DNA from: Auanema rhodensis | Lineage: Eukaryota; Animalia; Nematoda | Direction: 5' to 3' | NCBI GenBank assembly: GCA_964057225.1 | Contig: OZ059895.1 | Location: 5,022,001-5,086,000 of the forward strand | Length of the DNA stretch: 64,000 nucleotides | Part shown: positions 38,604 to 62,079 of the stretch, in pieces | How positions within the stretch are numbered: the stretch's first letter is position 1 | Layout: each line of letters starts with the position of its first letter | Notes under the pieces: generated by a model | The model's database searches: none | What the model was told of the DNA's origin: nothing | What the model saw: the letters and a program-made list of their open reading frames with translations, nothing else | Made by a program: the position numbers and the translations under genes

Positions 38604-41600
38604 TTAGTTAGTAGTTTCTTGGCGGACTTCGATCTTCTCAACAGTCATGTCAGGATTCATTTTAGTTGCATCTTGAATGGCTTGACTGAGCTCCTGAAAT
38701 ACCAACATTAACTGTCTAATTACAATTATTTAAAACATACCGCATCGTAATCTATGGCAGCATCGGAGTGAATAGTAACTCGATGTTCCACGTGAGTTTC
38801 AATTATACCATCCTTTTCCGTTTTGTAAGTGATGGTTTCGATAGTTCGATTTCCGCAAGTAACAGTTTTAGATGAGACAAATTCCCCAAGAGGCTAAAAT
38901 AGATAATAAATCTCAACATTAAATGAAATTATTTACATCATTTTGGTCTCTATCTGCATTATCTTCGTAAGTAAGTGTTCTAGTATGTGTCTCCACAACA
39001 GGACCTTCCTTTGGTGTTCCTAATGGTGTTGTCTGCTCACGAATACGTTCAACAGAAACATTTTCCTAAACAAATGAATTATGTCGGTTCAAATGAAGGT
39101 TTCAAGTAAACACTTACTGGTAGACTATCATCAGGAACGACATAGTTTTGGAAAGTTTGTTTTTGAACGGTATGCTTGACTTGAGAAGTTTTGACAGTTC
39201 GACTAAAGAATATAAATTAATGTTACAGAGTGATACTAAAAAAGACAAACGTGATTTTATTTCCATGTTCATCATATTCAACTGTGACGTCATCTGGTAA
39301 TATATTAGTCTCTTGCCAACTTGAAACAGTGAGATGGCGTTGCCCGCTCTCCTAAAAGTCGTATGGTTAGATATTTCCATGAATGTAAGCGATTGGGCAG
39401 TACTAAACCAAGAAGTATCAAAGTGACTTATAGCAAGCATCGGATAGCTTCCAAGAATCTTATGCTTTTATTAGCGTTAAAAATGTGTAATAGATTCATT
39501 GCCCCTACTATAACTAGTGGGCTCTTCTCTTCACGATATTAAGCTATAATCCTAACTAGACCAGGCAGGATAAACACAGTAAATGAGCATTGGATTCAAA
39601 CACAAGAAGGCAAAATAACTAAATATACACGAAGCTCGCATAAACTAAGACTGGGCTAACAATAGCAGCAGATCTAATGATCTAATCCGTTTTAGGCTCT
39701 AGTATGGGTCAGGACATTTGATGTTAGATAAATAAACATTCTTTGCGATTTAAAAGCCATCAAAGATATGCATTCAGAATTGCGATGAGCTAATGCGAAC
39801 AGAACTAATCAGATCTAAGTCCAAGTGCAGCTTCCAAGCAGAAATATCGAATGATCGGAAAGTCGGCAGCATAGTGGACTGGATGGCGCTTGAAAACAAA
39901 CAAGGATCTTGGTAAGTACTTGGTTATAGCTGCAAACGAAGACGAAGCGACATGTTGTAGCAAGTGACATCAGCGGTTGAGCCTACTACTATTGGGTACC
40001 TCGAAGGAGACCGGAAAAGGTGCCATAGCGCGCACAGTAAAGGTGCGCTCGGCCTGTTCAACTCGTGGACTGCTGTGGTTGAGGCGCTCAGCCTCGGCCA
40101 AAGTAGTTGCAAGTGACTAAATAACGACAAATCTACTCAAAATTGGTCTCTTAAGATATTATCATGAATACAAAATATAGTTTCTATGTTGTAGTGTCTG
40201 CTCAGCGGTTTGTTGGGTAGTGATGAAACCGCTATCTGCACACAACGCACGCAAAAAGATAAATAACAGTGAAAACAAAGTGGAAAGATAGAATGAAAAC
40301 CACACCGGATCATTCGGGTTGAAGCCCGACGATGAGCCTTCTCCTTTCAAGTGATATTTGAGCTCATTCGTCTCGCGGCGAACCACTTTGGCATCGGCAA
40401 GATGAGTCGAAGGTAGAATGCCAGGATTTTTGCCCTATATATGAAACCCGCAATAGAAAGTAATGTGTCGACAAAACAGATTCAGAATATTAAAAATAAT
40501 ATCATATTCGCAACATTCCGAAAAAAGAATACCAACATGCTTTCAATAAACAACTTATAAACGTTCTCATGAAGTAGATTAGTTATAATCATGAACAGTT
40601 ATTTGAAAAAAATTAACGTACCTCTGGTTCAGGACAAATGGTAACCATCTTTTGTTCATCTTCACTGGAAGAAGAATCACTTGAATCATTCTCTTTAACT
40701 CCTTTGTCCTTTTTGCCCTTAGTCTGAAAATATAGAATATAATATTAGAATTCCAGTAAATTTAACAGTTAATCATATTCGCTGATGAGTACTAGAATAC
40801 AACATATTGTTGGTATCACATCAATACTTCACGTACGTTTTTTCTGAAGTTCTCTGCTAGATGCAAGAGAGAAAACAAACATAATTCTATAGAACACTCA
40901 AAACTATAAGATAGACTAATTCTTGTCAGCTCGCACCACAATTTTTGCTTCTCGAGAAAAACGTGAAGTATTCATGATAATATTAAACATCAAAAATAGA
41001 ACTTTGTACTCATCAGCGACGCACAGTTTCTACTAAACTTCGCTCATATCATTGTTTTCACAAGCGTGCATATGGACTAAACAAAAACAACAAAGAAGGT
41101 GCTGTAGCTAAAATTTTGCAAAGAAGCGGAAGCTATAAACATGACAATCACAGCTATACAAGGAACTTCGTAGATGCCAGAAGATAAACATCAAATTGTG
41201 CAAGCATCGAAATGATAAACTTCTAAGTAGGCAACTGATCAAAACGATACAAAGTTTTGAAAGGTTAGGATCTTGAACAAATATTATAGTATGAAAGAAC
41301 AAAACATTGAACGTAAGAAACAGAACGATACAACATCCAGGTTAGAGCTACTTTGGAACCCAGGTGAAACTGTGATATTAACAGAAAAGAAGGAGAAAAT
41401 GAACTAATCACCTTAAAGCCCAAGCGGCTTAAAAAAGATCGGCCAGTGGGTGCCATTGGTGGTGGAGTAGCAGTGAATATAAGCCCTCCGTCATCTTCAG
41501 AAACAGCTCCTAACCCCGCCCCTGACAAACAAAAAACGGGCTCAAGTTGGATCTCCACCCTTCTCTCAACTCTGACTTCGATCCATTGTTGACCATCAAT

Positions 41601-44600
41601 TGTAGTACCTTCCGAATGAAAACTGTGATGTGAGACACGATTTCCGCATTCAGCCACAACTTTTTCAGAAGAAACATTTGAAACCTTCAGATCTTCAGAA
41701 CAACCATTTTTATCTCGAAAACATACATCGTTCCGAGCAATATTGATTGATCGAGAAATAGGAAAATTTTCCAAGTCCCGATGTGGCGCAAAATCATCTA
41801 AAGGTCCATCATATTTGTCAGACACTGGATAGGCTGCAAGTTCGTTAGTCTTAACTCCTGGCTTCAAGAATCCGAATCTCTTGCTTGAAGATTCACGAGT
41901 CTTACTGGTAGTCTTTTCAGGAGTAGATTCGGTTTCGTCAGGAACAATACGTGCAATGAGTCTAACTTCAGACTTCTCTTCGGTATCAGCAGAAGTAGAA
42001 GGTCCGGATTTCAGGTGTAAGATGGCCTTTTTCTTGCTGTCGGATGGAGCAGCAGCTGGCTTACTCTTTAGCCAAGACTGACCATGATGGTAGACATTGG
42101 TATGGTCTTTGAGTGGAGTAGAGTCCAAGTCACATTCCCTGTTAGTCTCTTCAAGAGGTCCGTCATAAGATGTTGAAGCAAATCCGTAAGATTCGGGTTG
42201 GACATGCTCTTTTTCGACAACGTCTTCATCACCGTCATGGCGAATTTGGGTAATGAATCGGAAGCGACGTTCCTCTGTTTCAGAGCTTGACACAGGAGAT
42301 TCAACAGTTTTCTTGGGACTATATGCAACTTGTGGAACGTTCTCGAGTGGAAGGTTTTCCAAGTCACGGTGTGGCTCAACATCATCTAAAGGTCCATCAT
42401 ATTTGTCAGACACTGGATAGGCTGCAAGTTCGTTAGTCTTAGTCTTGCGAGCTCCTGGCTTCAAGAATCCGAATCTCTTGCTTGAAGATTCACGAGTCTT
42501 ACTGGTAGTCTTTTCAGGAGTAGATTCGGTTTCGTCAGGAACAATACGTGCAATGAGTCTAACTTCAGACTTCTCTTCGGTATCAGCAGAAGTAGAAGGT
42601 CCGGATTTCAGGTGTAAGATGGCCTTTTTCTTGCTGTCGGATGGAGCAGCAGCTGGCTTACTCTTTAGCCAAGACTGACCATGATGGTAGACATTGGTAT
42701 GGTCTTTGAGTGGAGTAGAGTCCAAGTCACATTCCCTGTTAGTCTCTTCAAGAGGTCCGTCATAAGATGTTGAAGCAAATCCGTAAGATTCGGGTTGGAC
42801 ATGCTCTTTTTCGACAACGTCTTCATCACCGTCATGGCGAATTCGGGTAATGAATCGGAAGCGACGTTCCTCTGTTTCAGAGCTTGACACAGGAGATTCA
42901 ACAGTTTTCTTGGGACTATATGCAACTTGTGGAACGTTCTCGAGTGGAAGGTTTTCCAAGTCACGGTGTGGCTCAACATCATCTAAAGGTCCATCATATT
43001 TGTCAGACACTGGATAGGCTGCAAGTTCGTTAGTCTTAGTCTTGCGAGCTCCTGGCTTCAAGAATCCGAATCTCTTACTCGAAGATTCACGAGTCTTACT
43101 GGTAGTCTTTTCAGGAGTAGATTCGGTTTCGTCAGGAACAATACGTGCAATGAGTCTAACTTCAGACTTCTCTTCGGTATCAGCAGAAGTAGAAGGTCCG
43201 GATTTCAGGTGTAAGATGGCCTTTTTCTTGCTGTCGGATGGAGCAGCAGCTGGCTTACTCTTTAGCCAAGACTGACCATGATGGTAGACATTGGTATGGT
43301 CTTTGAGTGGAGTAGAGTCCAAGTCACATTCCCTGTTAGTCTCTTCAAGAGGTCCGTCATAAGATGTTGAAGCAAATCCGTAAGATTCGGGTTGGACATG
43401 CTCTTTTTCGACAACGTCTTCATCACCGTCATGGCGAATTCGGGTAATGAATCGGAAGCGACGTTCCTCTGTTTCAGAGCTTGACACAGGAGATTCAACA
43501 GTTTTCTTGGGACTATATGCAACTTGTGGAACGTTCTCGAGTGGAAGGTTTTCCAAGTCACGGTGTGGCTCAACATCATCTAAAGGTCCATCATATTTGT
43601 CAGACACTGGATAGGCTGCAAGTTCGTTAGTCTTAGTCTTGCGAGCTCCTGGCTTCAAGAATCCGAATCTCTTGCTTGAAGATTCACGAGTCTTACTGGT
43701 AGTCTTTTCAGGAGTAGATTCGGTTTCGTCAGGAACAATACGTGCAATGAGTCTAACTTCAGACTTCTCTTCGGTATCAGCAGAAGTAGAAGGTCCGGAT
43801 TTCAGGTGTAAGATGGCCTTTTTCTTGCTGTCGGATGGAGCAGCAGCTGGCTTACTCTTTAGCCAAGACTGACCATGATGGTAGACATTGGTATGGTCTT
43901 TGAGTGGAGTAGAGTCCAAGTCACATTTCCTGTTAGTCTCTTCAAGAGGTCCGTCATAAGATGTTGAAGCAAATCCGTAAGATTCGGGTTGGACATGCTC
44001 TTTTTCGACAACGTCTTCATCACCGTCATGGCGAATTCGGGTAATGAATCGGAAGCGACGTTCCTCTGTTTCAGAGCTTGACACAGGAGATTCAACAGTT
44101 TTCTTGGGACTATATGCAACTTGTGGAACGTTCTCGAGTGGAAGGTTTTCCAAGTCACGGTGTGGCTCAACATCATCTAAAGGTCCATCATATTTGTCAG
44201 ACACTGGATAGGCTGCAAGTTCGTTAGTCTTAGTCTTGCGAGCTCCTGGCTTCAAGAATCCGAATCTCTTGCTTGAAGATTCACGAGTCTTACTGGTAGT
44301 CTTTTCAGGAGTAGATTCGGTTTCATCAGGAACAATACGTGCAATGAGTCTAACTTCAGACTTCTCTTCGGTGTCAGCAGAAGTAGAAGGTCCGGATTTC
44401 AGGTGTAAGATGGCCTTTTTCTTGCTGTCGGATGGAGCAGCAGCTGGCTTACTCTTTAGCCAAGACTGACCATGATGGTAGACATTGGTATGGTCTTTGA
44501 GTGGAGTAGAGTCCAAGTCACATTCCCTGTTAGTCTCTTCAAGAGGTCCGTCATAAGATGTTGAAGCAAATCCGTAAGATTCGGGTTGGACATGCTCTTT

Positions 44601-47600
44601 TTCGACAACGTCTTCATCACCGTCATGGCGAATTCGGGTAATGAATCGGAAGCGACGTTCCTCTGTTTCAGAGCTTGACACAGGAGATTCAACAGTTTTC
44701 TTGGGACTATATGCAACTTGTGGAACGTTCTCGAGTGGAAGGTTTTCCAAGTCACGGTGTGGCTCAACATCATCTAAAGGTCCATCATATTTGTCAGACA
44801 CTGGATAGGCTGCAAGTTCGTTAGTCTTAGTCTTGCGAACTCCTGGCTTCAAGAATCCGAATCTCTTGCTTGAAGATTCACGAGTCTTACTGGTAGTCTT
44901 TTCAGGAGTAGATTCGGTTTCGTCAGGAACAATACGTGCAATGAGTCTAACTTCAGACTTCTCTTCGGTATCAGCAGAAGTAGAAGGTCCGGATTTCAGG
45001 TGTAAGATGGCCTTTTTCTTGCTGTCGGATGGAGCAGCAGCTGGCTTACTCTTTAGCCAAGACTGACCATGATGGTAGACATTGGTATGGTCTTTGAGTG
45101 GAGTAGAGTCCAAGTCACATTCCCTGTTAGTCTCTTCAAGAGGTCCGTCATAAGATGTTGAAGCAAATCCGTAAGATTCGGGTTGGACATGCTCTTTTTC
45201 GACAACGTCTTCATCACCGTCATGGCGAATTCGGGTAATGAATCGGAAGCGACGTTCCTCTGTTTCAGAGCTTGACACAGGAGATTCAACAGTTTTCTTG
45301 GGACTATATGCAACTTGTGGAACGTTCTCGAGTGGAAGGTTTTCCAAGTCACGGTGTGGCTCAACATCATCTAAAGGTCCATCATATTTGTCAGACACTG
45401 GATAGGCTGCAAGTTCGTTAGTCTTAGTCTTGCGAGCTCCTGGCTTCAAGAATCCGAATCTCTTGCTTGAAGATTCACGAGTCTTACTGGTAGTCTTTTC
45501 AGGAGTAGATTCGGTTTCGTCAGGAACAATACGTGCAATGAGTCTAACTTCAGACTTCTCTTCGGTATCAGCAGAAGTAGAAGGTCCGGATTTCAGGTGT
45601 AAGATGGCCTTTTTCTTGCTGTCGGATGGAGCAGCAGCTGGCTTACTCTTTAGCCAAGACTGACCATGATGGTAGACATTGGTATGGTCTTTGAGTGGAG
45701 TAGAGTCCAAGTCACATTCCCTGTTAGTCTCTTCAAGAGGTCCGTCATAAGATGTTGAAGCAAATCCGTAAGATTCGGGTTGGACATGCTCTTTTTCGAC
45801 AACGTCTTCATCACCGTCATGGCGAATTCGGGTAATGAATCGGAAGCGACGTTCCTCTGTTTCAGAGCTTGACACAGGAGATTCAACAGTTTTCTTGGGA
45901 CTATATGCAACTTGTGGAACGTTCTCGAGTGGAAGGTTCTCCAAGTCACGGTGTGGCTCAACATCATCTAAAGGTCCATCATATTTGTCAGACACTGGAT
46001 AGGCTGCAAGTTCGTTAGTCTTAGTCTTGCGAACTCCTGGCTTCAAGAATCCGAATCTCTTGCTTGAAGATTCACGAGTCTTACTGGTAGTCTTTTCAGG
46101 AGTAGATTCGGTTTCGTCAGGAACAATACGTGCAATGAGTCTAACTTCAGACTTCTCTTCGGTATCAGCAGAAGTAGAAGGTCCGGATTTCAGGTGTAAG
46201 ATGGCCTTTTTCTTGCTGTCGGATGGAGCAGCAGCTGGCTTACTCTTTAGCCAAGACTGACCATGATGGTAGACATTGGTATGGTCTTTGAGTGGAGTAG
46301 AGTCCAAGTCACATTCCCTGTTAGTCTCTTCAAGAGGTCCGTCATAAGATGTTGAAGCAAATCCGTAAGATTCGGGTTGGACATGCTCTTTTTCGACAAC
46401 GTCTTCATCACCGTCATGGCGAATTCGGGTAATGAATCGGAAGCGACGTTCCTCTGTTTCAGAGCTTGACACAGGAGATTCAACAGTTTTCTTGGGACTA
46501 TATGCAACTTGTGGAACGTTCTCGAGTGGAAGGTTTTCCAAGTCACGGTGTGGCTCAACATCATCTAAAGGTCCATCGTATTTGTCAGACACTGGATAGG
46601 CTGCAAGTTCGTTAGTCTTAGTCTTGCGAACTCCTGGCTTCAAGAATCCGAATCTCTTGCTTGAAGATTCACGAGTCTTACTGGTAGTCTTTTCAGGAGT
46701 AGATTCGGTTTCGTCAGGAACAATACGTGCAATGAGTCTAACTTCAGACTTCTCTTCGGTGTCAGCAGAAGTAGAAGGTCCGGATTTCAGGTGTAAGATG
46801 GCCTTTTTCTTGCTGTCGGATGGAGCAGCAGCTGGCTTACTCTTTAGCCAAGACTGACCATGATGGTAGACATTGGTATGGTCTTTGAGTGGAGTAGAGT
46901 CCAAGTCACATTCCCTGTTAGTCTCTTCAAGAGGTCCGTCATAAGATGTTGAAGCAAATCCGTAAGATTCGGGTTGGACATGCTCTTTTTCGACAACGTC
47001 TTCATCACCGTCATGGCGAATTCGGGTAATGAATCGGAAGCGACGTTCCTCTGTTTCAGAGCTTGACACAGGAGATTCAACAGTTTTCTTGGGACTATAT
47101 GCAACTTGTGGAACGTTCTCGAGTGGAAGGTTCTCCAAGTCACGGTGTGGCTCAACATCATCTAAAGGTCCATCATATTTGTCAGACACTGGATAGGCTG
47201 CAAGTTCGTTAGTCTTAGTCTTGCGAACTCCTGGCTTCAAGAATCCGAATCTCTTGCTTGAAGATTCACGAGTCTTACTGGTAGTCTTTTCAGGAGTAGA
47301 TTCGGTTTCGTCAGGAACAATACGTGCAATGAGTCTAACTTCAGACTTCTCTTCGGTATCAGCAGAAGTAGAAGGTCCGGATTTCAGGTGTAAGATGGCC
47401 TTTTTCTTGCTGTCGGATGGAGCAGCAGCTGGCTTACTCTTTAGCCAAGACTGACCATGATGGTAGACATTGGTATGGTCTTTGAGTGGAGTAGAGTCCA
47501 AGTCACATTCCCTGTTAGTCTCTTCAAGAGGTCCGTCATAAGATGTTGAAGCAAATCCGTAAGATTCGGGTTGGACATGCTCTTTTTCGACAACGTCTTC

Positions 47601-50600
47601 ATCACCGTCATGGCGAATTCGGGTAATGAATCGGAAGCGACGTTCCTCTGTTTCAGAGCTTGACACAGGAGATTCAACAGTTTTCTTGGGACTATATGCA
47701 ACTTGTGGAACGTTCTCGAGTGGAAGGTTTTCCAAGTCACGGTGTGGCTCAACATCATCTAAAGGTCCATCGTATTTGTCAGACACTGGATAGGCTGCAA
47801 GTTCGTTAGTCTTAGTCTTGCGAACTCCTGGCTTCAAGAATCCGAATCTCTTGCTTGAAGATTCACGAGTCTTACTGGTAGTCTTTTCAGGAGTAGATTC
47901 GGTTTCGTCAGGAACAATACGTGCAATGAGTCTAACTTCAGACTTCTCTTCGGTGTCAGCAGAAGTAGAAGGTCCGGATTTCAGGTGTAAGATGGCCTTT
48001 TTCTTGCTGTCGGATGGAGCAGCAGCTGGCTTACTCTTTAGCCAAGACTGACCATGATGGTAGACATTGGTATGGTCTTTGAGTGGAGTAGAGTCCAAGT
48101 CACATTCCCTGTTAGTCTCTTCAAGAGGTCCGTCATAAGATGTTGAAGCAAATCCGTAAGATTCGGGTTGGACATGCTCTTTTTCGACAACGTCTTCATC
48201 ACCGTCATGGCGAATTCGGGTAATGAATCGGAAGCGACGTTCCTCTGTTTCAGAGCTTGACACAGGAGATTCAACAGTTTTCTTGGGACTATATGCAACT
48301 TGTGGAACGTTCTCGAGTGGAAGGTTTTCCAAGTCACGGTGTGGCTCAACATCATCTAAAGGTCCATCATATTTGTCAGACACTGGATAGGCTGCAAGTT
48401 CGTTAGTCTTAGTCTTGCGAGCTCCTGGCTTCAAGAATCCGAATCTCTTGCTTGAAGATTCACGAGTCTTACTGGTAGTCTTTTCAGGAGTAGATTCGGT
48501 TTCGTCAGGAACAATACGTGCAATGAGTCTAACTTCAGACTTCTCTTCGGTATCAGCAGAAGTAGAAGGTCCGGATTTCAGGTGTAAGATGGCCTTTTTC
48601 TTGCTGTCGGATGGAGCAGCAGCTGGCTTACTCTTTAGCCAAGACTGACCATGATGGTAGACATTGGTATGGTCTTTGAGTGGAGTAGAGTCCAAGTCAC
48701 ATTCCCTGTTAGTCTCTTCAAGAGGTCCGTCATAAGATGTTGAAGCAAATCCGTAAGATTCGGGTTGGACATGCTCTTTTTCGACAACGTCTTCATCACC
48801 GTCATGGCGAATTCGGGTAATGAATCGGAAGCGACGTTCCTCTGTTTCAGAGCTTGACACAGGAGATTCAACAGTTTTCTTGGGACTATATGCAACTTGT
48901 GGAACGTTCTCGAGTGGAAGGTTCTCCAAGTCACGGTGTGGCTCAACATCATCTAAAGGTCCATCATATTTGTCAGACACTGGATAGGCTGCAAGTTCGT
49001 TAGTCTTAGTCTTGCGAACTCCTGGCTTCAAGAATCCGAATCTCTTGCTTGAAGATTCACGAGTCTTACTGGTAGTCTTTTCAGGAGTAGATTCGGTTTC
49101 GTCAGGAACAATACGTGCAATGAGTCTAACTTCAGACTTCTCTTCGGTATCAGCAGAAGTAGAAGGTCCGGATTTCAGGTGTAAGATGGCCTTTTTCTTG
49201 CTGTCGGATGGAGCAGCAGCTGGCTTACTCTTTAGCCAAGACTGACCATGATGGTAGACATTGGTATGGTCTTTGAGTGGAGTAGAGTCCAAGTCACATT
49301 CCCTGTTAGTCTCTTCAAGAGGTCCGTCATAAGATGTTGAAGCAAATCCGTAAGATTCGGGTTGGACATGCTCTTTTTCGACAACGTCTTCATCACCGTC
49401 ATGGCGAATTCGGGTAATGAATCGGAAGCGACGTTCCTCTGTTTCAGAGCTTACCACAGGAGATTCAACAGTTTTCTTGGGACTATATGCAACTTGTGGA
49501 ACGTTCTCGAGTGGAAGGTTTTCCAAGTCACGGTGTGGCTCAACATCATCTAAAGGTCCATCATATTTGTCAGACACTGGATAGGCTGCAAGTTCGTTAG
49601 TCTTAGTCTTGCGAGCTCCTGGCTTCAAGAATCCGAATCTCTTGCTTGAAGATTCACGAGTCTTACTGGTAGTCTTTTCAGGAGTAGATTCGGTTTCGTC
49701 AGGAACAATACGTGCAATGAGTCTAACTTCAGACTTCTCTTCGGTGTCAGCAGAAGTAGAAGGTCCGGATTTCAGGTGTAAGATGGCCTTTTTCTTGCTG
49801 TCGGATGGAGCAGCAGCTGGCTTACTCTTTAGCCAAGACTGACCATGATGGTAGACATTGGTATGGTCTTTGAGTGGAGTAGAGTCCAAGTCACATTCCC
49901 TGTTAGTCTCTTCAAGAGGTCCGTCATAAGATGTTGAAGCAAATCCGTAAGATTCGGGTTGGACATGCTCTTTTTCGACAACGTCTTCATCACCGTCATG
50001 GCGAATTCGGGTAATGAATCGGAAGCGACGTTCCTCTGTTTCAGAGCTTGACACAGGAGATTCAACAGTTTTCTTGGGACTATATGCAACTTGTGGAACG
50101 TTCTCGAGTGGAAGGTTTTCCAAGTCACGGTGTGGCTCAACATCATCTAAAGGTCCATCGTATTTGTCAGACACTGGATAGGCTGCAAGTTCGTTAGTCT
50201 TAGTCTTGCGAACTCCTGGCTTCAAGAATCCGAATCTCTTGCTTGAAGATTCACGAGTCTTACTGGTAGTCTTTTCAGGAGTAGATTCGGTTTCGTCAGG
50301 AACAATACGTGCAATGAGTCTAACTTCAGACTTCTCTTCGGTGTCAGCAGAAGTAGAAGGTCCGGATTTCAGGTGTAAGATGGCCTTTTTCTTGCTGTCG
50401 GATGGAGCAGCAGCTGGCTTACTCTTTAGCCAAGACTGACCATGATGGTAGACATTGGTATGGTCTTTGAGTGGAGTAGAGTCCAAGTCACATTCCCTGT
50501 TAGTCTCTTCAAGAGGTCCGTCATAAGATGTTGAAGCAAATCCGTAAGATTCGGGTTGGACATGCTCTTTTTCGACAACGTCTTCATCACCGTCATGGCG

Positions 50601-53600
50601 AATTCGGGTAATGAATCGGAAGCGACGTTCCTCTGTTTCAGAGCTTGACACAGGAGATTCAACAGTTTTCTTGGGACTATATGCAACTTGTGGAACGTTC
50701 TCGAGTGGAAGGTTTTCCAAGTCACGGTGTGGCTCAACATCATCTAAAGGTCCATCATATTTGTCAGACACTGGATAGGCTGCAAGTTCGTTAGTCTTAG
50801 TCTTGCGAACTCCTGGCTTCAAGAATCCGAATCTCTTGCTTGAAGATTCACGAGTCTTACTGGTAGTCTTTTCAGGAGTAGATTCGGTTTCGTCAGGAAC
50901 AATACGTGCAATGAGTCTAACTTCAGACTTCTCTTCGGTATCAGCAGAAGTAGAAGGTCCGGATTTCAGGTGTAAGATGGCCTTTTTCTTGCTGTCGGAT
51001 GGAGCAGCAGCTGGCTTACTCTTTAGCCAAGACTGACCATGATGGTAGACATTGGTATGGTCTTTGAGTGGAGTAGAGTCCAAGTCACATTCCCTGTTAG
51101 TCTCTTCAAGAGGTCCGTCATAAGATGTTGAAGCAAATCCGTAAGATTCGGGTTGGACATGCTCTTTTTCGACAACGTCTTCATCACCGTCATGGCGAAT
51201 TCGGGTAATGAATCGGAAGCGACGTTCCTCTGTTTCAGAGCTTACCACAGGAGATTCAACAGTTTTCTTGGGACTATATGCAACTTGTGGAACGTTCTCG
51301 AGTGGAAGGTTTTCCAAGTCACGGTGTGGCTCAACATCATCTAAAGGTCCATCATATTTGTCAGACACTGGATAGGCTGCAAGTTCGTTAGTCTTAGTCT
51401 TGCGAGCTCCTGGCTTCAAGAATCCGAATCTCTTGCTTGAAGATTCACGAGTCTTACTGGTAGTCTTTTCAGGAGTAGATTCGGTTTCGTCAGGAACAAT
51501 ACGTGCAATGAGTCTAACTTCAGACTTCTCTTCGGTATCAGCAGAAGTAGAAGGTCCGGATTTCAGGTGTAAGATGGCCTTTTTCTTGCTGTCGGATGGA
51601 GCAGCAGCTGGCTTACTCTTTAGCCAAGACTGACCATGATGGTAGACATTGGTATGGTCTTTGAGTGGAGTAGAGTCCAAGTCACATTCCCTGTTAGTCT
51701 CTTCAAGAGGTCCGTCATAAGATGTTGAAGCAAATCCGTAAGATTCGGGTTGGACATGCTCTTTTTCGACAACGTCTTCATCACCGTCATGGCGAATTCG
51801 GGTAATGAATCGGAAGCGACGTTCCTCTGTTTCAGAGCTTACCACAGGAGATTCAACAGTTTTCTTGGGACTATATGCAACTTGTGGAACGTTCTCGAGT
51901 GGAAGGTTTTCCAAGTCACGGTGTGGCTCAACATCATCTAAAGGTCCATCATATTTGTCAGACACTGGATAGGCTGCAAGTTCGTTAGTCTTAGTCTTGC
52001 GAGCTCCTGGCTTCAAGAATCCGAATCTCTTGCTTGAAGATTCACGAGTCTTACTGGTAGTCTTTTCAGGAGTAGATTCGGTTTCGTCAGGAACAATACG
52101 TGCAATGAGTCTAACTTCAGACTTCTCTTCGGTGTCAGCAGAAGTAGAAGGTCCGGATTTCAGGTGTAAGATGGCCTTTTTCTTGCTGTCGGATGGAGCA
52201 GCAGCTGGCTTACTCTTTAGCCAAGACTGACCATGATGGTAGACATTGGTATGGTCTTTGAGTGGAGTAGAGTCCAAGTCACATTCCCTGTTAGTCTCTT
52301 CAAGAGGTCCGTCATAAGATGTTGAAGCAAATCCGTAAGATTCGGGTTGGACATGCTCTTTTTCGACAACGTCTTCATCACCGTCATGGCGAATTCGGGT
52401 AATGAATCGGAAGCGACGTTCCTCTGTTTCAGAGCTTACCACAGGAGATTCAACAGTTTTCTTGGGACTATATGCAACTTGTGGAACGTTCTCGAGTGGA
52501 AGGTTTTCCAAGTCACGGTGTGGCTCAACATCATCTAAAGGTCCATCATATTTGTCAGACACTGGATAGGCTGCAAGTTCGTTAGTCTTAGTCTTGCGAG
52601 CTCCTGGCTTCAAGAATCCGAATCTCTTGCTTGAAGATTCACGAGTCTTACTGGTAGTCTTTTCAGGAGTAGATTCGGTTTCGTCAGGAACAATACGTGC
52701 AATGAGTCTAACTTCAGACTTCTCTTCGGTGTCAGCAGAAGTAGAAGGTCCGGATTTCAGGTGTAAGATGGCCTTTTTCTTGCTGTCGGATGGAGCAGCA
52801 GCTGGCTTACTCTTTAGCCAAGACTGACCATGATGGTAGACATTGGTATGGTCTTTGAGTGGAGTAGAGTCCAAGTCACATTCCCTGTTAGTCTCTTCAA
52901 GAGGTCCGTCATAAGATGTTGAAGCAAATCCGTAAGATTCGGGTTGGACATGCTCTTTTTCGACAACGTCTTCATCACCGTCATGGCGAATTCGGGTAAT
53001 GAATCGGAAGCGACGTTCCTCTGTTTCAGAGCTTGACACAGGAGATTCAACAGTTTTCTTGGGACTATATGCAACTTGTGGAACGTTCTCGAGTGGAAGG
53101 TTCTCCAAGTCACGGTGTGGCTCAACATCATCTAAAGGTCCATCGTATTTGTCAGACACTGGATAGGCTGCAAGTTCGTTAGTCTTAGTCTTGCGAACTC
53201 CTGGCTTCAAGAATCCGAATCTCTTGCTTGAAGATTCACGAGTCTTACTGGTAGTCTTTTCAGGAGTAGATTCGGTTTCGTCAGGAACAATACGTGCAAT
53301 GAGTCTAACTTCAGACTTCTCTTCGGTATCAGCAGAAGTAGAAGGTCCGGATTTCAGGTGTAAGATGGCCTTTTTCTTGCTGTCGGATGGAGCAGCAGCT
53401 GGCTTACTCTTTAGCCAAGACTGACCATGATGGTAGACATTGGTATGGTCTTTGAGTGGAGTAGAGTCCAAGTCACATTCCCTGTTAGTCTCTTCAAGAG
53501 GTCCGTCATAAGATGTTGAAGCAAATCCGTAAGATTCGGGTTGGACATGCTCTTTTTCGACAACGTCTTCATCACCGTCATGGCGAATTCGGGTAATGAA

Positions 53601-56600
53601 TCGGAAGCGACGTTCCTCTGTTTCAGAGCTTGACACAGGAGATTCAACAGTTTTCTTGGGACTATATGCAACTTGTGGGACGTTCTCGAGTGGAAGGTTT
53701 TCCAAGTCACGGTGTGGCTCAACATCATCTAAAGGTCCATCGTATTTGTCAGACACTGGATAGGCTGCAAGTTCGTTAGTCTTAGTCTTGCGAACTCCTG
53801 GCTTCAAGAATCCGAATCTCTTGCTTGAAGATTCACGAGTCTTACTGGTAGTCTTTTCAGGAGTAGATTCGGTTTCGTCAGGAACAATACGTGCAATGAG
53901 TCTAACTTCAGACTTCTCTTCGGTATCAGCAGAAGTAGAAGGTCCGGATTTCAGGTGTAAGATGGCCTTTTTCTTGCTGTCGGATGGAGCAGCAGCTGGC
54001 TTACTCTTTAGCCAAGACTGACCATGATGGTAGACATTGGTATGGTCTTTGAGTGGAGTAGAGTCCAAGTCACATTCCCTGTTAGTCTCTTCAAGAGGTC
54101 CGTCATAAGATGTTGAAGCAAATCCGTAAGATTCGGGTTGGACATGCTCTTTTTCGACAACGTCTTCATCACCGTCATGGCGAATTCGGGTAATGAATCG
54201 GAAGCGACGTTCCTCTGTTTCAGAGCTTGACACAGGAGATTCAACAGTTTTCTTGGGACTATATGCAACTTGTGGGACGTTCTCGAGTGGAAGGTTTTCC
54301 AAGTCACGGTGTGGCTCAACATCATCTAAAGGTCCATCGTATTTGTCAGACACTGGATAGGCTGCAAGTTCGTTAGTCTTAGTCTTGCGAACTCCTGGCT
54401 TCAAGAATCCGAATCTCTTGCTTGAAGATTCACGAGTCTTACTGGTAGTCTTTTCAGGAGTAGATTCGGTTTCGTCAGGAACAATACGTGCAATGAGTCG
54501 AACTTCAGACTTCTCTTCGGTATCAGCAGAAGTAGAAGGTCCGGATTTCAGGTGTAAGATGGCCTTTTTCTTGCTGTCGGATGGAGCAGCAGCTGGCTTA
54601 CTCTTTAGCCAAGACTGACCATGATGGTAGACATTGGTATGGTCTTTGAGTGGAGTAGAGTCCAAGTCACATTCCCTGTTAGTCTCTTCAAGAGGTCCGT
54701 CATAAGATGTTGAAGCAAATCCGTAAGATTCGGGTTGGACATGCTCTTTTTCGACAACGTCTTCATCACCGTCATGGCGAATTCGGGTAATGAATCGGAA
54801 GCGACGTTCCTCTGTTTCAGAGCATGACACAGGAGATTCAACAGTTTTCTTGGGACTATATGCAACTTGTGGAACGTTCTCGAGTGGAAGGTTTTCCAAG
54901 TCACGGTGTGGCTCAACATCATCTAAAGGTCCATCGTATTTGTCAGACACTGGATAGGCTGCAAGTTCGTTAGTCTTAGTCTTGCGAACTCCTGGCTTCA
55001 AGAATCCGAATCTCTTGCTTGAAGATTCACGAGTCTTACTGGTAGTCTTTTCAGGAGTAGATTCGGTTTCGTCAGGAACAATACGTGCAATGAGTCTAAC
55101 TTCAGACTTCTCTTCGGTGTCAGCAGAAGTAGAAGGTCCGGATTTCAGGTGTAAGATGGCCTTTTTCTTGCTGTCGGATGGAGCAGCAGCTGGCTTACTC
55201 TTTAGCCAAGACTGACCATGATGGTAGACATTGGTATGGTCTTTGAGTGGAGTAGAGTCCAAGTCACATTCCCTGTTAGTCTCTTCAAGAGGTCCGTCAT
55301 AAGATGTTGAAGCAAATCCGTAAGATTCGGGTTGGACATGCTCTTTTTCGACAACGTCTTCATCACCGTCATGGCGAATTCGGGTAATGAATCGGAAGCG
55401 ACGTTCCTCTGTTTCAGAGCTTGACACAGGAGATTCAACAGTTTTCTTGGGACTATATGCAACTTGTGGAACGTTCTCGAGTGGAAGGTTTTCCAAGTCA
55501 CGGTGTGGCTCAACATCATCTAAAGGTCCATCGTATTTGTCAGACACTGGATAGGCTGCAAGTTCGTTAGTCTTAGTCTTGCGAACTCCTGGCTTCAAGA
55601 ATCCGAATCTCTTGCTTGAAGATTCACGAGTCTTACTGGTAGTCTTTTCAGGAGTAGATTCGGTTTCGTCAGGAACAATACGTGCAATGAGTCTAACTTC
55701 AGACTTCTCTTCGGTATCAGCAGAAGTAGAAGGTCCGGATTTCAGGTGTAAGATGGCCTTTTTCTTGCTGTCGGATGGAGCAGCAGCTGGCTTACTCTTT
55801 AGCCAAGACTGACCATGATGGTAGACATTGGTATGGTCTTTGAGTGGAGTAGAGTCCAAGTCACATTCCCTGTTAGTCTCTTCAAGAGGTCCGTCATAAG
55901 ATGTTGAAGCAAATCCGTAAGATTCGGGTTGGACATGCTCTTTTTCGACAACGTCTTCATCACCGTCATGGCGAATTCGGGTAATGAATCGGAAGCGACG
56001 TTCCTCTGTTTCAGAGCTTGACACAGGAGATTCAACAGTTTTCTTGGGACTATATGCAACTTGTGGAACGTTCTCGAGTGGAAGGTTTTCCAAGTCACGG
56101 TGTGGCTCAACATCATCTAAAGGTCCATCATATTTGTCAGACACTGGATAGGCTGCAAGTTCGTTAGTCTTAGTCTTGCGAGCTCCTGGCTTCAAGAATC
56201 CGAATCTCTTGCTTGAAGATTCACGAGTCTTACTGGTAGTCTTTTCAGGAGTAGATTCGGTTTCGTCAGGAACAATACGTGCAATGAGTCTAACTTCAGA
56301 CTTCTCTTCGGTATCAGCAGAAGTAGAAGGTCCGGATTTCAGGTGTAAGATGGCCTTTTTCTTGCTGTCGGATGGAGCAGCAGCTGGCTTACTCTTTAGC
56401 CAAGACTGACCATGATGGTAGACATTGGTATGGTCTTTGAGTGGAGTAGAGTCCAAGTCACATTCCCTGTTAGTCTCTTCAAGAGGTCCGTCATAAGATG
56501 TTGAAGCAAATCCGTAAGATTCGGGTTGGACATGCTCTTTTTCGACAACGTCTTCATCACCGTCATGGCGAATTCGGGTAATGAATCGGAAGCGACGTTC

Positions 56601-59600
56601 CTCTGTTTCAGAGCTTGACACAGGAGATTCAACAGTTTTCTTGGGACTATATGCAACTTGTGGAACGTTCTCGAGTGGAAGGTTTTCCAAGTCACGGTGT
56701 GGCTCAACATCATCTAAAGGTCCATCATATTTGTCAGACACTGGATAGGCTGCAAGTTCGTTAGTCTTAGTCTTGCGAGCTCCTGGCTTCAAGAATCCGA
56801 ATCTCTTACTCGAAGATTCACGAGTCTTACTGGTAGTCTTTTCAGGAGTAGATTCGGTTTCGTCAGGAACAATACGTGCAATGAGTCTAACTTCAGACTT
56901 CTCTTCGGTGTCAGCAGAAGTAGAAGGTCCGGATTTCAGGTGTAAGATGGCCTTTTTCTTGCTGTCGGATGGAGCAGCAGCTGGCTTACTCTTTAGCCAA
57001 GACTGACCATGATGGTAGACATTGGTATGGTCTTTGAGTGGAGTAGAGTCCAAGTCACATTCCCTGTTAGTCTCTTCAAGAGGTCCGTCATAAGATGTTG
57101 AAGCAAATCCGTAAGATTCGGGTTGGACATGCTCTTTTTCGACAACGTCTTCATCACCGTCATGGCGAATTCGGGTAATGAATCGGAAGCGACGTTCCTC
57201 TGTTTCAGAGCTTGACACAGGAGATTCAACAGTTTTCTTGGGACTATATGCAACTTGTGGAACGTTCTCGAGTGGAAGGTTCTCCAAGTCACGGTGTGGC
57301 TCAACATCATCTAAAGGTCCATCATATTTGTCAGACACTGGATAGGCTGCAAGTTCGTTAGTCTTAGTCTTGCGAGCTCCTGGCTTCAAGAATCCGAATC
57401 TCTTGCTTGAAGATTCACGAGTCTTACTGGTAGTCTTTTCAGGAGTAGATTCGGTTTCGTCAGGAACAATACGTGCAATGAGTCTAACTTCAGACTTCTC
57501 TTCGGTATCAGCAGAAGTAGAAGGTCCGGATTTCAGGTGTAAGATGGCCTTTTTCTTGCTGTCGGATGGAGCAGCAGCTGGCTTACTCTTTAGCCAAGAC
57601 TGACCATGATGGTAGACATTGGTATGGTCTTTGAGTGGAGTAGAGTCCAAGTCACATTCCCTGTTAGTCTCTTCAAGAGGTCCGTCATAAGATGTTGAAG
57701 CAAATCCGTAAGATTCGGGTTGGACATGCTCTTTTTCGACAACGTCTTCATCACCGTCATGGCGAATTCGGGTAATGAATCGGAAGCGACGTTCCTCTGT
57801 TTCAGAGCTTGACACAGGAGATTCAACAGTTTTCTTGGGACTATATGCAACTTGTGGAACGTTCTCGAGTGGAAGGTTTTCCAAGTCACGGTGTGGCTCA
57901 ACATCATCTAAAGGTCCATCGTATTTGTCAGACACTGGATAGGCTGCAAGTTCGTTAGTCTTAGTCTTGCGAACTCCTGGCTTCAAGAATCCGAATCTCT
58001 TGCTTGAAGATTCACGAGTCTTACTGGTAGTCTTTTCAGGAGTAGATTCGGTTTCGTCAGGAACAATACGTGCAATGAGTCTAACTTCAGACTTCTCTTC
58101 GGTATCAGCAGAAGTAGAAGGTCCGGATTTCAGGTGTAAGATGGCCTTTTTCTTGCTGTCGGATGGAGCAGCAGCTGGCTTACTCTTTAGCCAAGACTGA
58201 CCATGATGGTAGACATTGGTATGGTCTTTGAGTGGAGTAGAGTCCAAGTCACATTCCCTGTTAGTCTCTTCAAGAGGTCCGTCATAAGATGTTGAAGCAA
58301 ATCCGTAAGATTCGGGTTGGACATGCTCTTTTTCGACAACGTCTTCATCACCGTCATGGCGAATTCGGGTAATGAATCGGAAGCGACGTTCCTCTGTTTC
58401 AGAGCTTGACACAGGAGATTCAACAGTTTTCTTGGGACTATATGCAACTTGTGGAACGTTCTCGAGTGGAAGGTTTTCCAAGTCACGGTGTGGCTCAACA
58501 TCATCTAAAGGTCCATCATATTTGTCAGACACTGGATAGGCTGCAAGTTCGTTAGTCTTAGTCTTGCGAGCTCCTGGCTTCAAGAATCCGAATCTCTTAC
58601 TCGAAGATTCACGAGTCTTACTGGTAGTCTTTTCAGGAGTAGATTCGGTTTCGTCAGGAACAATACGTGCAATGAGTCTAACTTCAGACTTCTCTTCGGT
58701 GTCAGCAGAAGTAGAAGGTCCGGATTTCAGGTGTAAGATGGCCTTTTTCTTGCTGTCGGATGGAGCAGCAGCTGGCTTACTCTTTAGCCAAGACTGACCA
58801 TGATGGTAGACATTGGTATGGTCTTTGAGTGGAGTAGAGTCCAAGTCACATTCCCTGTTAGTCTCTTCAAGAGGTCCGTCATAAGATGTTGAAGCAAATC
58901 CGTAAGATTCGGGTTGGACATGCTCTTTTTCGACAACGTCTTCATCACCGTCATGGCGAATTCGGGTAATGAATCGGAAGCGACGTTCCTCTGTTTCAGA
59001 GCTTGACACAGGAGATTCAACAGTTTTCTTGGGACTATATGCAACTTGTGGAACGTTCTCGAGTGGAAGGTTCTCCAAGTCACGGTGTGGCTCAACATCA
59101 TCTAAAGGTCCATCATATTTGTCAGACACTGGATAGGCTGCAAGTTCGTTAGTCTTAGTCTTGCGAACTCCTGGCTTCAAGAATCCGAATCTCTTGCTTG
59201 AAGATTCACGAGTCTTACTGGTAGTCTTTTCAGGAGTAGATTCGGTTTCGTCAGGAACAATACGTGCAATGAGTCTAACTTCAGACTTCTCTTCGGTATC
59301 AGCAGAAGTAGAAGGTCCGGATTTCAGGTGTAAGATGGCCTTTTTCTTGCTGTCGGATGGAGCAGCAGCTGGCTTACTCTTTAGCCAAGACTGACCATGA
59401 TGGTAGACATTGGTATGGTCTTTGAGTGGAGTAGAGTCCAAGTCACATTCCCTGTTAGTCTCTTCAAGAGGTCCGTCATAAGATGTTGAAGCAAATCCGT
59501 AAGATTCGGGTTGGACATGCTCTTTTTCGACAACGTCTTCATCACCGTCATGGCGAATTCGGGTAATGAATCGGAAGCGACGTTCCTCTGTTTCAGAGCT

Positions 59601-62079
59601 TGACACAGGAGATTCAACAGTTTTCTTGGGACTATATGCAACTTGTGGAGCGTTCTCGAGTGGAAGGTTCTCCAAGTCACGGTGTGGCTCAACATCATCT
59701 AAAGGTCCATCGTATTTGTCAGACACTGGATACTTTTTGGTTTTCCGAGATGTAAAAAGGGAACGAATGTTATGTGTTTCTCTTGTTCTTTCATTATGGT
59801 GGGAAGAAATATCATTACTATGAGAGATAGATGCTGAAGGATCAGTCCAATAAATAGTGGAGTATTCGTTGATATTTTTGCTCTGGATGTCTTGCGATTT
59901 TTCCAATCGTTGAAGAGGAATATGTGTGTATGAAGGAAAGTTATAATATTTTACATCTGGCGGTGAGTCATCACTATATCCTGGGTGTATTATCCTACTG
60001 ATTCTAAATTGTTCTCTCTGTCCAGAGTGTGTTACATCAACAAAGTAACGAATGGGATGAGGTTCAAGATCTCCGATAAGGTCAAGTTGATTCGGCCGGT
60101 TGGATCCATTTCGGGGAGAATAGGGTAATATTGGAACGGTTGGCGATTGTAAAGAGTGTGAGTAGTACCCATGATGATAAAGTTGAACAGATTCGGCTAT
60201 TGGTAACTGTGGCAAGTCTTCTTCGAATTTTGTAGGGGAGAGAGGAATGAGGGGATCAGCTGGCTCATGAAATGACAGTAAGCGTACTGGTTGTCCGTTA
60301 TCGCGCCCAAACAAATTGCGTCTCACATTCGGCTGCGTTTTTTTTACTCGCAGAACAACTCTATTTGGAGAAATCGCTCCAGTTGATTGAGGCGAGCGAA
60401 GCGATGTTTCAGATATATAATAAGCAGCCGACGTGGGAGATTCAATAGGCGTGTAGACAAGCTCGTCGTCATCAGAATTTAGCTCGTCACGTACCTTATC
60501 TTTTGTTGCTGCCTCCGGAGTTGGTGATACTTCGTACGAGGTAACTGGTGAAGATAAAGGCTATAATGAATTTCATTTCTTCAAGTTATGTTCTTATGAA
60601 CTTACATTTTGTGAGCCTAATTCTCTATCGTTATACCCAAGAACATCGACAGTTTCATTGTTTTTGGCTACTGCAAAAAAAATATATATAGAACAAGAGT
60701 CGATGAGCAAACCATTGTCGCATGATTGGGTAAGTCTAGCACTACTAGATCGTTGTACTGTAGCAGAAGCTGGTCGGTCAAACATATGAGATGCCATTTT
60801 AGTTTGGAACTGTGTTCTTCCATTATATCTAAACCGAGCGGATCCCCAACGGAATAGACCAGCTTTTCGTTTGTCTTCTGGTTGAATTAATCTGAAAAGA
60901 ATAATGAAAAAATATACAACTTCAGTTAAACCTAAAGAATGTGTGATGCTCAACTCCACATTTATAAATACGCTTAGCATAAGTGTAATCAGCCACTTTA
61001 TATACCAATGTAGTTGACTTCTTATCGAGCTTAACTTATTATATAAAATGTATACTTAATTAATAATACTACCTCTCCCGGATTAAGTTTGATAGCAAAT
61101 GTATTTTTACGATAGCTTATCTTGTTAATATTTTGCCATAAAAAGCGGTGAAGACGTATAGTTTCTTTATAAATATTAATACCAGTAGCACATATGCCAA
61201 TTGAAACTGGGTTACTGCTTTTATCCTAGTAAAATTAAAATAAAACAAAATATAATAATAACGTACTTTAGCTTCATAAACGAAAACTCCGTACATACTT
61301 AGCTGTTTGCAGGTATCTAGATATTTCATCTCAGCTTCAGCTGGGGTAAGTCCTCTTAAAAAATATTTTTTATTTGATTTGTAATAGGCACTCACTTGTG
61401 TTCCTTATGTGCATCTTTGATTTTATCACTCAAATCATTATTTTTAGGTTCTAATACAGCTGATCTCAAGTATTGTTCATATTCAACAGAAGAATTGGCA
61501 TCGCCGAATTCAGCTTGCGCTACGAGAGAACCCAGAAGAACATGTGTTGGAATAGTAGCTGGTAACCTTAAAACTTTTGTTAGTATGCATGTCTTCATAT
61601 AAAGTTTTACCTCCCGCTATAAATATCGTTCCTAAGTTGCAAGAATAGATTGCTTCTAGCATGATCATCATTTAAAGTGGAAGGAGTGGTCGGATAGAAT
61701 TTGACCTCAAATGAGAACACCCATGGTAGGCCTAAAACACAACCATTCTTTAGTTAATAGATATTCTAATCACCTTTAAGTTGTCGAAGTATCTTTTTAT
61801 CTGTGTACAGCCAATGTCGAACTCCTTCGGTATCATGATAAGCAAGAGAGAAGTAATCATGTTCTTCTATAGAAACTTCTGTGCTTACCATAGTGAAAAG
61901 AGTATCTCCTTTCGAACCACGCTGAAAGTAAAAAATTAGATTTTTTTTTTCAGTCCTCTTACTGGAAGTAGGAAATCTTTAACAGTGCCATCAAGCATAT
62001 GAACTTTTGCTGCTTGCATTTTTGGGTCTTGAATTTTAGGCTGTGCGGCCTCTCCTCCGGGGTCTCCGTCCTTACCCAT
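38604..62079 (-). CDS. frm-1: Protein 4.1/Coracle family FERM protein with FA domain, giant repeat exon and 4.1 C-terminal domain
   Basis: ATG 62079. FERM exons (VHMLDGT, FSFEVKFYP, GSLVAQAEFGD, GLTPAEAEMKYL, SMYGV, CGVEHHTFFRL), FA region FRWGSARFRYNGRTQ, and giant exon 60560-41412. C-terminal exons end ETHVEHRVTIHSDAAIDYDA|ELSQAIQDATKMNPDMTVEKIEVRQETTN* (4.1 CTD); stop 38604-38606. Confidence 0.92.
41760..59731 (-). repeat. Coding tandem array: 30 x 597 bp (199 aa) plus a degenerate partial unit
   Basis: Shadow ORFs recur at a 597-bp period from 42068 to 59381 (29 intervals). Units differ by a few substitutions; the last has an in-frame 9-bp deletion. Confidence 0.98.

What the first reader, a model, noticed from the sequence alone, without database searches (positions are those of the whole stretch)
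41412..60560. Giant protein 4.1: one 19,149-bp exon with 30 near-identical 199-aa repeats between the FERM and CTD domains
Seen: the frame is open from acceptor ttcattatag|CCT (60560) to donor TTTAAG|gtgatt (41412), which is 6,383 codons, phase 0 at both ends, with no intron in a genome of tiny exons. It sits between the FERM-FA exons and the 4.1 CTD exons, so the 6,353-aa ORF is an internal exon rather than a standalone gene. The spliced product is roughly 7,000 aa. Known: giant exons define neuronal giant ankyrins (UNC-44L, Ank2-L/XL, AnkG), partners in the same spectrin membrane skeleton. From recall, C. elegans frm-1 has long isoforms of several thousand residues, so length alone may not be new. 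Inference: this near-perfect homogeneous array is a lineage-specific giant-4.1 spacer or multivalent scaffold.
Basis: partly seen in the sequence, partly recalled or inferred. Interest (0 to 1): 0.85.

Follow-up and report, generated by a model that had tools for sequence, protein, structure and literature searches.

The report
Giant splice form of nematode FRM-1
A roundworm membrane-skeleton gene (protein 4.1/FRM-1) can be spliced either short or with a 19-kb insert of 30 near-identical repeats; this giant form is already annotated in C. elegans and occurs in many nematodes, but its repeats carry an undescribed 40-residue motif shared with a second giant membrane-anchored worm protein, ZC247.1.

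Summary
Window 60560-41412 (minus strand) is one open 6,383-codon stretch, phase 0 at both ends, with 30 units of 199 aa (99.5% identical). It lies between the FERM/FA and 4.1-CTD exons of a nematode frm-1 gene, probably from Auanema. It is not lineage-specific. C. elegans frm-1 has the same single giant exon (11,688 nt, same 3' end), its 609-nt array is equally homogeneous and was noted in print, and Bursaphelenchus has about 32 near-identical units. Homogeneity recurs through concerted evolution. Added here: (1) an alternative 5' splice site 66 nt into the exon is the probable short/giant switch, matching Haemonchus, Parascaris and Auanema melissensis; (2) the repeat is under purifying selection (dN/dS about 0.12) and predicted unfolded; (3) each unit holds two copies of a fixed-length ~40-aa motif with no Pfam model, found otherwise only in the giant CaaX-ending ZC247.1 family. 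The scan earlier reported a 15,000-aa ZC247.1 orthologue in this genome (s1-419234); the summary shown to me does not mention this link. Best reading: a membrane-anchored disordered tether with ~60 docking sites for a repetitive cortical partner (inferred; partner unknown).

The parts
61963..62079 (-). exon 1 with ATG at 62079 (start of FERM N-lobe)
61774..61921 (-). exon 2, FERM_N
   Evidence: E 2.9e-11
61611..61731 (-). exon 3, FERM_N/M
61396..61566 (-). exon 4, FERM_M
61267..61354 (-). exon 5, FERM_M/C
61073..61225 (-). exon 6, FERM_C
   Evidence: E 2.1e-13
60932..61029 (-). exon 7, FERM_C
60713..60891 (-). exon 8, FERM-adjacent (FA)
   Evidence: E 4.8e-10
60606..60670 (-). exon 9
60495..60560 (-). 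66-nt segment (22 codons) predicted to be shared by short and giant isoforms
   Evidence: short isoforms of relatives keep it
60489..60494 (-). proximal (short-isoform) 5' splice site GTACGT, phase 0
   Evidence: best donor score inside the exon; identical AAG|GTACGT in A. melissensis
41412..60494 (-). giant extension, 19,083 nt, included when the distal donor is used
59733..60494 (-). unique 5' part, conserved in clade V, with two degenerate half-cores at 60224-60159 and 60080-60018
41832..59732 (-). array of 30 units (29 x 199 aa + 1 x 196 aa); each unit = core A (aa 1-35), core B (aa 52-116), charged linker
59613..59732 (-). first core A
59379..59504 (-). first core B
41748..41831 (-). partial 31st core A
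41412..41747 (-). unique 3' part ending SFLSRLGFK, conserved with C. elegans and strongylids; possible internal phase-1 acceptor before 41521
41406..41411 (-). distal (giant-isoform) 5' splice site GTGATT
40622..40723 (-). next exon, basic then Ser/acidic
40306..40434 (-). exon (optional in relatives)
40000..40116 (-). optional 39-codon exon, 74% identical to a C. elegans alternative exon
39251..39351 (-). C-terminal region exon
39118..39202 (-). C-terminal region exon
38937..39065 (-). C-terminal region exon
38741..38893 (-). 4.1 CTD exon
38604..38693 (-). last exon, 4.1 CTD and stop

Best explanation
This is the giant splice isoform of nematode FRM-1/protein 4.1, an old feature of Rhabditida. 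Choice of the proximal donor (after 60495) gives a ~660-700-aa protein; choice of the distal donor (41411) adds 6,361 aa between FA and the CTD. The insert is a disordered chain carrying about 61 copies of a fixed-length ~40-aa motif (Y-x-GPL...R...[ED]L...P[LI]...VYH-x-G). I infer that each copy folds on binding a repetitive partner, so the FERM end holds the membrane and the array zips along a cortical cytoskeletal polymer with high avidity. The actin-spectrin lattice is my first guess, because the insert sits where vertebrate 4.1 has its spectrin-actin-binding segment; microtubules are second. The near-identity of copies is a by-product of recurrent unequal crossing-over and gene conversion, filtered by purifying selection, not a novelty of this lineage. 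Shown: anatomy, orthology, selection, motif sharing, no predicted fold. Inferred: use of both donors in this species, binding, partner.
For: Same exon with same 3' end in RefSeq C. elegans isoforms. Short isoforms of Haemonchus, Parascaris and a strongylid intron-less Logan contig leave the long form after ~22 codons, at a position compatible with a GT donor. dN 0.18 and dS 1.5 against the A. melissensis unit; within the array 8 synonymous to 5 replacement variants, p 0.003, piN/piS 0.18. Replacements are fewer in the cores than in the linker (14/100 vs 41/128, p 0.002). Core spacing is invariant in 650 of 657 FRM-1 and 371 of 371 ZC247.1-type pattern matches, while unit period varies 75-244 aa. 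AlphaFold2 gives pTM 0.21 for one unit and 0.18 for two, with local pLDDT 70-84 only over the cores in the one-unit model. The profile hits only 185 of 1.84 billion proteins; those I could assign are giant FRM-1 or the FERM-less ZC247.1 family ending in a basic stretch plus CaaX, so both carriers have a predicted membrane anchor. Units cluster by species in homogenised lineages and by position in ascarids and C. briggsae/nigoni; 14 site pairs fail the four-gamete test.
Against: No partner identified: no PDB or Pfam match, Atlas blank. A complete frm-1 deletion in C. elegans was obtained and had a mild phenotype in the neuron assayed (10.1101/2025.06.18.660273). Purified FRM-1 did not bind F-actin alone, though that was probably the short form. 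C. elegans has no strong early donor (best early phase-0 sites score 3.7-5.9), so the switch may differ there. Filarial-like and Strongyloides proteins keep only 4-14 modules.
Confidence: 0.55

Rival explanations
1. Inert entropic spacer, spring or brush: the insert only sets distance or resists load between the FERM-bound membrane and the CTD partner, as postulated for the Drosophila Ank2-XL array.
For: S+E+T+D+K+P make up 54%, close to the >55% of ankyrin long exons (PMC5135030). No predicted fold. Total length varies about two-fold among species.
Against: Ankyrin long-exon repeats are homologous only among very close species. This core keeps fixed spacing and aromatic/Gly/Pro positions across clades III-V and in a second gene.
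Confidence: 0.2
2. The cores are self-association stickers or phospho-switches: the insert drives condensate or mesh formation at the cortex, possibly FRM-1 with ZC247.1, tuned by proline-directed kinases.
For: Short FRM-1 phase-separates in vitro. Three S/T-P-x-K sites per unit at aa 34, 101 and 166. Tyr/His-rich cores alternate with charged linkers.
Against: The two-unit model shows no core-core packing. Strict spacing is more than stickers usually need (my own knowledge).
Confidence: 0.12
3. The exon is real but the copy number or the homogeneity is inflated by assembly or polishing.
For: Units are 99.5% identical and no reads could be checked. Some orthologue arrays are 100% identical (B. 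xylophilus, O. ostertagi), which can reflect consensus smoothing. A short-read Auanema assembly collapsed the array.
Against: 20 distinct unit haplotypes; longest exact repeat only 1,565 nt; variants biased to synonymous sites; no indel errors. The finished C. elegans genome shows the same level of identity. Assemblers more often collapse than expand (my own knowledge).
Confidence: 0.1
4. The array is an intronic satellite inside the short isoform's intron and is not translated.
For: It is intronic whenever the proximal donor is used, and one paper met the C. elegans repeats as intronic sequence.
Against: 6,383 open codons, dN/dS 0.12, conserved terminal peptide and donor, annotated giant isoforms in many species.
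Confidence: 0.03

Closest known systems
C. elegans frm-1 (ZK270.2) long isoforms NP_001021866.1, NP_493600.2, NP_493601.2 (4,530-4,648 aa)
   Same: Orthologous gene; one giant phase-0 exon (11,688 nt) between FA and CTD exons; same terminal peptide and donor; homologous ~203-aa unit; same array homogeneity.
   Different: About 10 homogeneous units plus diverged flanking ones, against 30 here; no strong early donor at the matching place.
Giant FRM-1 of Bursaphelenchus xylophilus/okinawaensis (7,691/7,812 aa), Haemonchus, Ostertagia, Pristionchus, C. bovis, C. auriculariae
   Same: Homologous unit in homogeneous arrays of 12-33 copies, 95-100% identical within species.
   Different: Period 191-244 aa; each species has its own homogenised version. 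C. remanei, C. briggsae and ascarids have diverged arrays.
C. elegans ZC247.1 (NP_492698.3, 4,389 aa) and its family
   Same: Same ~40-aa core in a long array within one giant exon (11,160 nt); predicted membrane anchor at one end.
   Different: No FERM or CTD; one core per ~75-80-aa unit; anchor is a C-terminal basic stretch plus CaaX.
Giant ankyrins (AnkG 480 kDa, Drosophila Ank2-L/XL with 93 x 76-aa repeats, UNC-44L)
   Same: Membrane-skeleton adaptor enlarged by one very long exon with S/E/T/D/K/P-rich composition (PMC5135030).
   Different: Unrelated gene family; ankyrin long-exon repeats are not conserved over long distances; no ankyrin recognised among the listed profile hits.
Vertebrate protein 4.1 (EPB41 family)
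   Same: FERM-FA ... CTD order with alternative splicing in between.
   Different: Several listed vertebrate hits carry the SAB domain PF04382; none of the nematode proteins listed does. The core motif is absent from 56 non-nematode or unassigned 4.1 proteins (best 2.7 bits).

Membership tests
Protein 4.1 / nematode FRM-1 | N-terminal FERM domain (N, M, C lobes) | tested here: met
   exon by exon
Protein 4.1 / nematode FRM-1 | FERM-adjacent (FA) domain | tested here: met
   39.7 bits over cut-off 30.6
Protein 4.1 / nematode FRM-1 | 4.1 C-terminal domain | tested here: met
   two exons at 21.5 and 21.6 bits covering profile 31-106; 43/51 and 24/29 identical to C. elegans FRM-1
Protein 4.1 / nematode FRM-1 | Orthology to C. 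elegans frm-1 (exon order, giant-exon end, alternative exons) | tested here: met
Vertebrate-type 4.1 | Spectrin-actin-binding domain PF04382 | tested here: not met
   no SAB hit in the ten pieces scanned or in nematode orthologues; exons 40723-38937 were not scanned
Giant FRM-1 isoform | Single multi-kb exon with ~200-aa A+B repeat, ending SF[LF]xRLGFK | tested here: met
Giant FRM-1 isoform | Transcript or protein evidence in this species | not testable with these tools
Giant ankyrins | 24 ankyrin repeats plus ZU5-ZU5-UPA-DD | tested here: not met
   gene is FERM-FA-CTD
Giant ankyrins (works like) | Very long exon with S/E/T/D/K/P bias of about 55% | tested here: met
   54.4% against >55% in PMC5135030
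Giant ankyrins (works like) | Neuronal or axonal restriction and microtubule organisation | not testable with these tools
   needs isoform-specific tagging
ZC247.1 family | ~40-aa core motif in array | tested here: met
   ZC-only profile scores window cores 39.8, 29.9 and 28.9 bits against at most 3.0 for 200 shuffles; unbiased reciprocal search hits giant FRM-1 at E 1.9e-48
ZC247.1 family | C-terminal basic stretch plus CaaX, no FERM | tested here: not met
   window protein ends in the 4.1 CTD
Folded tandem-repeat (solenoid) proteins | Units that fold and stack | tested here: not met
   pTM 0.21 and 0.18; prediction only

The most novel reading that the evidence does not exclude
The ~40-aa core is an undescribed nematode-specific docking motif. 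Two unrelated giant membrane-anchored proteins (FERM-anchored giant FRM-1 and prenyl-anchored ZC247.1) display it 60-180 times to clamp the same cortical filament, forming a giant-scaffold layer of the membrane skeleton parallel to giant ankyrin, switched on in frm-1 by one conserved 5' splice-site choice.
Probability: 0.4. Interest if true: 0.72.

Novelty: new member of a known kind. Interest (0 to 1): 0.45.

Why it matters
The giant exon itself is not new. The FRM-1 papers I read do not discuss isoforms or the repeats, and my searches found no paper on the giant form. The shared motif ties two uncharacterised giant proteins together and gives a small testable unit: one 40-aa peptide for pull-down, one exon to delete in C. 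elegans. It was not found outside nematodes and is present in parasites of animals and plants. The locus is also a clear case of coding tandem arrays switching between concerted evolution and frozen divergence, and short-read assemblies can lose it.

Tried and rejected
Pfam, PDB and ESM Atlas give nothing for the unit or core. Fold search was not run because both models are low-confidence. Paper searches for 'frm-1 giant', 'giant exon + protein 4.1' and ZK270.2 found no description of the giant isoform; Choi et al. 2011 is not held, so an earlier description there cannot be excluded. Look-ups for a transcript contig spanning the distal junction in a relative failed. Rejected: standalone gene (flanking exons are in frame); lineage-specific invention; folded solenoid; antisense 105-aa ORFs as genes (they are the repeat's shadow); motif in non-nematode 4.1 (the one hit, P0097, is closest to Pristionchus FRM-1). 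The hhalign score is partly circular, since both sets were cut with one pattern; I rely and the shuffle control. The tree is the quick tree, not the finished careful one. Only 150 of the 185 profile hits were listed and many fragments are unnamed, so a non-nematode carrier is not excluded. No contig looked human.
Full report
Observation. Translating each exon separately gives a 17-exon gene from ATG 62079 to a stop at 38604, mostly with 40-52-nt introns, phase 0 on both sides of the giant exon, and 7,025 aa in total. One more optional exon lies at 40116-40000. Pfam finds FERM and FA upstream and the 4.1 CTD downstream. The array runs from 59732 to 41832: 29 units of 597 nt and one of 588 nt, 14 variable sites, mean 3.2 differences per unit pair.

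Identity. Exon by exon, the closest FERM domain is that of Auanema sp. JU1783 (A. melissensis) at 275/315 identities, then strongylids at about 218. The A. melissensis repeat unit is sister to the window's units with support 96, and the downstream lipocalin gene is shared. The genome is therefore probably another Auanema species (inference). The gene is the orthologue of C. elegans frm-1.

Not lineage-specific. A search with residues 190-600 of the ORF returned 25 giant proteins, all named ones from nematodes; 21 carry FERM domains and come from clades III, IV and V. All carry the homologous unit, with periods of about 185-244 aa. In C. elegans the three RefSeq long isoforms share one exon of 11,688 nt ending SFLARLGFK before a GT donor, the same end as here. 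Its nine full 609-nt units differ by 3.06 nt on average, equal to the window. B. xylophilus (29 sampled units identical), B. okinawaensis (0.995), C. bovis, Pristionchus and Ostertagia are similarly homogeneous. The C. elegans array was mentioned as '10 tandem repeats of 609 bases' in frm-1 (PMC4039745), and frm-1 is among the main sources of circular DNA from coding regions in that species (PMC5633380), which fits an array prone to recombination. In a tree of units, homogenised species form species clusters, whereas ascarid units and C. briggsae/nigoni units pair by position across species. Within the window array, 14 site pairs show all four gametes and divergence does not rise with distance. 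This is recurrent concerted evolution.

The switch. AAG|GTACGT 66 nt into the exon is in frame and is the best-scoring donor inside it. A. melissensis has the identical site. Short FRM-1 proteins of Haemonchus and Parascaris follow their long forms for about 22 codons into the exon and then resume exactly after the giant exon's end. An intron-less strongylid Logan contig shows the same short junction. So the short form (about 664 aa, or 703 with the optional exon) and the giant form most likely differ by 5' splice-site choice. C. elegans lacks a strong donor at this place and may skip differently.

The repeat is coding and selected. Against the A. melissensis unit, dN is 0.18 and dS is 1.5. 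Within the array there are 8 synonymous and 5 replacement variants (p 0.003; piN/piS 0.18). This also argues against random assembly error. Each unit holds two related cores, as note s1-404797 suggested, but the conserved part is about 40 aa rather than 100: core A at aa 1-35 and the extended core B at aa 52-116. Replacements concentrate in the linker (p 0.002). The spacing inside the core is almost invariant. AlphaFold2 with 107 and 63 aligned sequences gives no fold for one or two units (pTM 0.21 and 0.18), with raised local confidence only over the cores. The composition lies on the disordered side of the charge-hydropathy boundary. The insert would measure about 2.3 micrometres fully extended and 25-36 nm radius of gyration as a coil (scaling estimates).

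A second carrier. A profile of core B found only 185 proteins among 1.84 billion. Those I could assign are giant FRM-1 proteins or fragments, and a FERM-less family with one core per 75-80 aa whose complete members end in a basic stretch plus CaaX. An independent search from a C. nigoni member returned C. elegans NP_492698.3, which is ZC247.1, and also giant FRM-1 proteins down to E 1.9e-48. ZC247.1 also keeps its array in one giant exon. It is described only as a repeat-rich protein expressed in neurons, distal tip cell and muscle, with germline defects on RNAi (PMC9253893). The scan's note s1-419234 reports a 15,029-aa orthologue elsewhere in this genome; I did not see that sequence. No Pfam, PDB or Atlas entry matches the core, and non-nematode 4.1 proteins lack it.

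Mechanism. Two unrelated proteins with a predicted membrane anchor display the same fixed-length motif dozens of times on a disordered chain. The simplest reading is a fold-on-binding docking motif for a repetitive partner near the membrane, giving avidity along a filament (0.55). The actin-spectrin cortex is my first candidate: FRM-1 works with ERM-1 in membrane-cortex attachment (PMC13733786), acts with FRM-4 and F-actin at ER-plasma-membrane junctions (10.1101/2025.06.18.660273), and the insert sits where vertebrate 4.1 has its spectrin-actin-binding segment (my own knowledge). Purified FRM-1 did not bind F-actin alone, but residue numbers in that preprint point to the short form. Rivals are an inert spacer or spring as proposed for Ank2-XL (0.2), self-association or phospho-regulated condensates (0.12), inflated copy number (0.1) and a non-coding satellite (0.03). 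Unlike ankyrin long-exon repeats, which are homologous only among close species (PMC5135030), this core is conserved across Rhabditida.

Verdict. The remaining interest is that this isoform appears unstudied, and that its core motif is unnamed and shared with ZC247.1. Interest 0.45.

Noticed in passing
L007:14876-15585 and L004:1-696: In the short-read A. melissensis assembly the frm-1 scaffold keeps both donors but only about 640 nt between them, with the 3' unique part broken upstream of an acceptor-like site, while an intact repeat unit sits alone on a 696-nt contig. Misassembly, or a second copy that lost the array; unresolved.
   Followed up: partly
window 41521-41412 (minus): A good acceptor (TTTGTCAG, phase 1) 110 nt before the distal donor could give a mini-exon in frame with phase-1 donors such as exon 8's; the matching part stays open in A. 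melissensis. No protein with that junction was found.
   Followed up: partly
window 59732-41832, each unit near nt 514: Every unit contains a phase-1 donor-like CCA|GTAAGA scoring as well as real donors; with the 41521 acceptor it could yield isoforms with 1-30 units. Untested.
   Followed up: no
P0001, P0028, P0029 (Haemonchus contortus models): Annotated isoforms differ by exactly 1 or 4 whole 206-aa units; real unit skipping or mapping artefact.
   Followed up: partly
window 40116-40000 (minus): Optional 39-codon exon, 74% identical to a C. elegans alternative exon, not mentioned in the finding.
   Followed up: yes
window 37357-36220 (minus) and 35820-35160: Lipocalin_10 gene and a Gly-X-Y collagen-like gene downstream of frm-1; same neighbours in A. 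melissensis (L007).
   Followed up: partly
window 5960-8560 (plus): 866-aa Thr/Ser-rich open frame without Pfam match, mucin-like; probably another large exon.
   Followed up: no
window 24236-24601 (minus): Weak sulfate transporter (PF00916) match, probably an exon of an SLC26 gene.
   Followed up: no
L005:8439-19841 and L006:6433-19055: Two unnamed metagenome or read-assembly contigs hold 2,682- and 2,724-aa single ORFs with the core motif between FERM and CTD exons: further giant frm-1 exons in unidentified animals, presumably nematodes.
   Followed up: partly
P0150, P0154, P0156, P0157, P0163 (filarial-like) and P0147 (Strongyloides ratti): FRM-1 proteins with only 4-14 modules, showing the array can also shrink or be partly replaced.
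   Followed up: no
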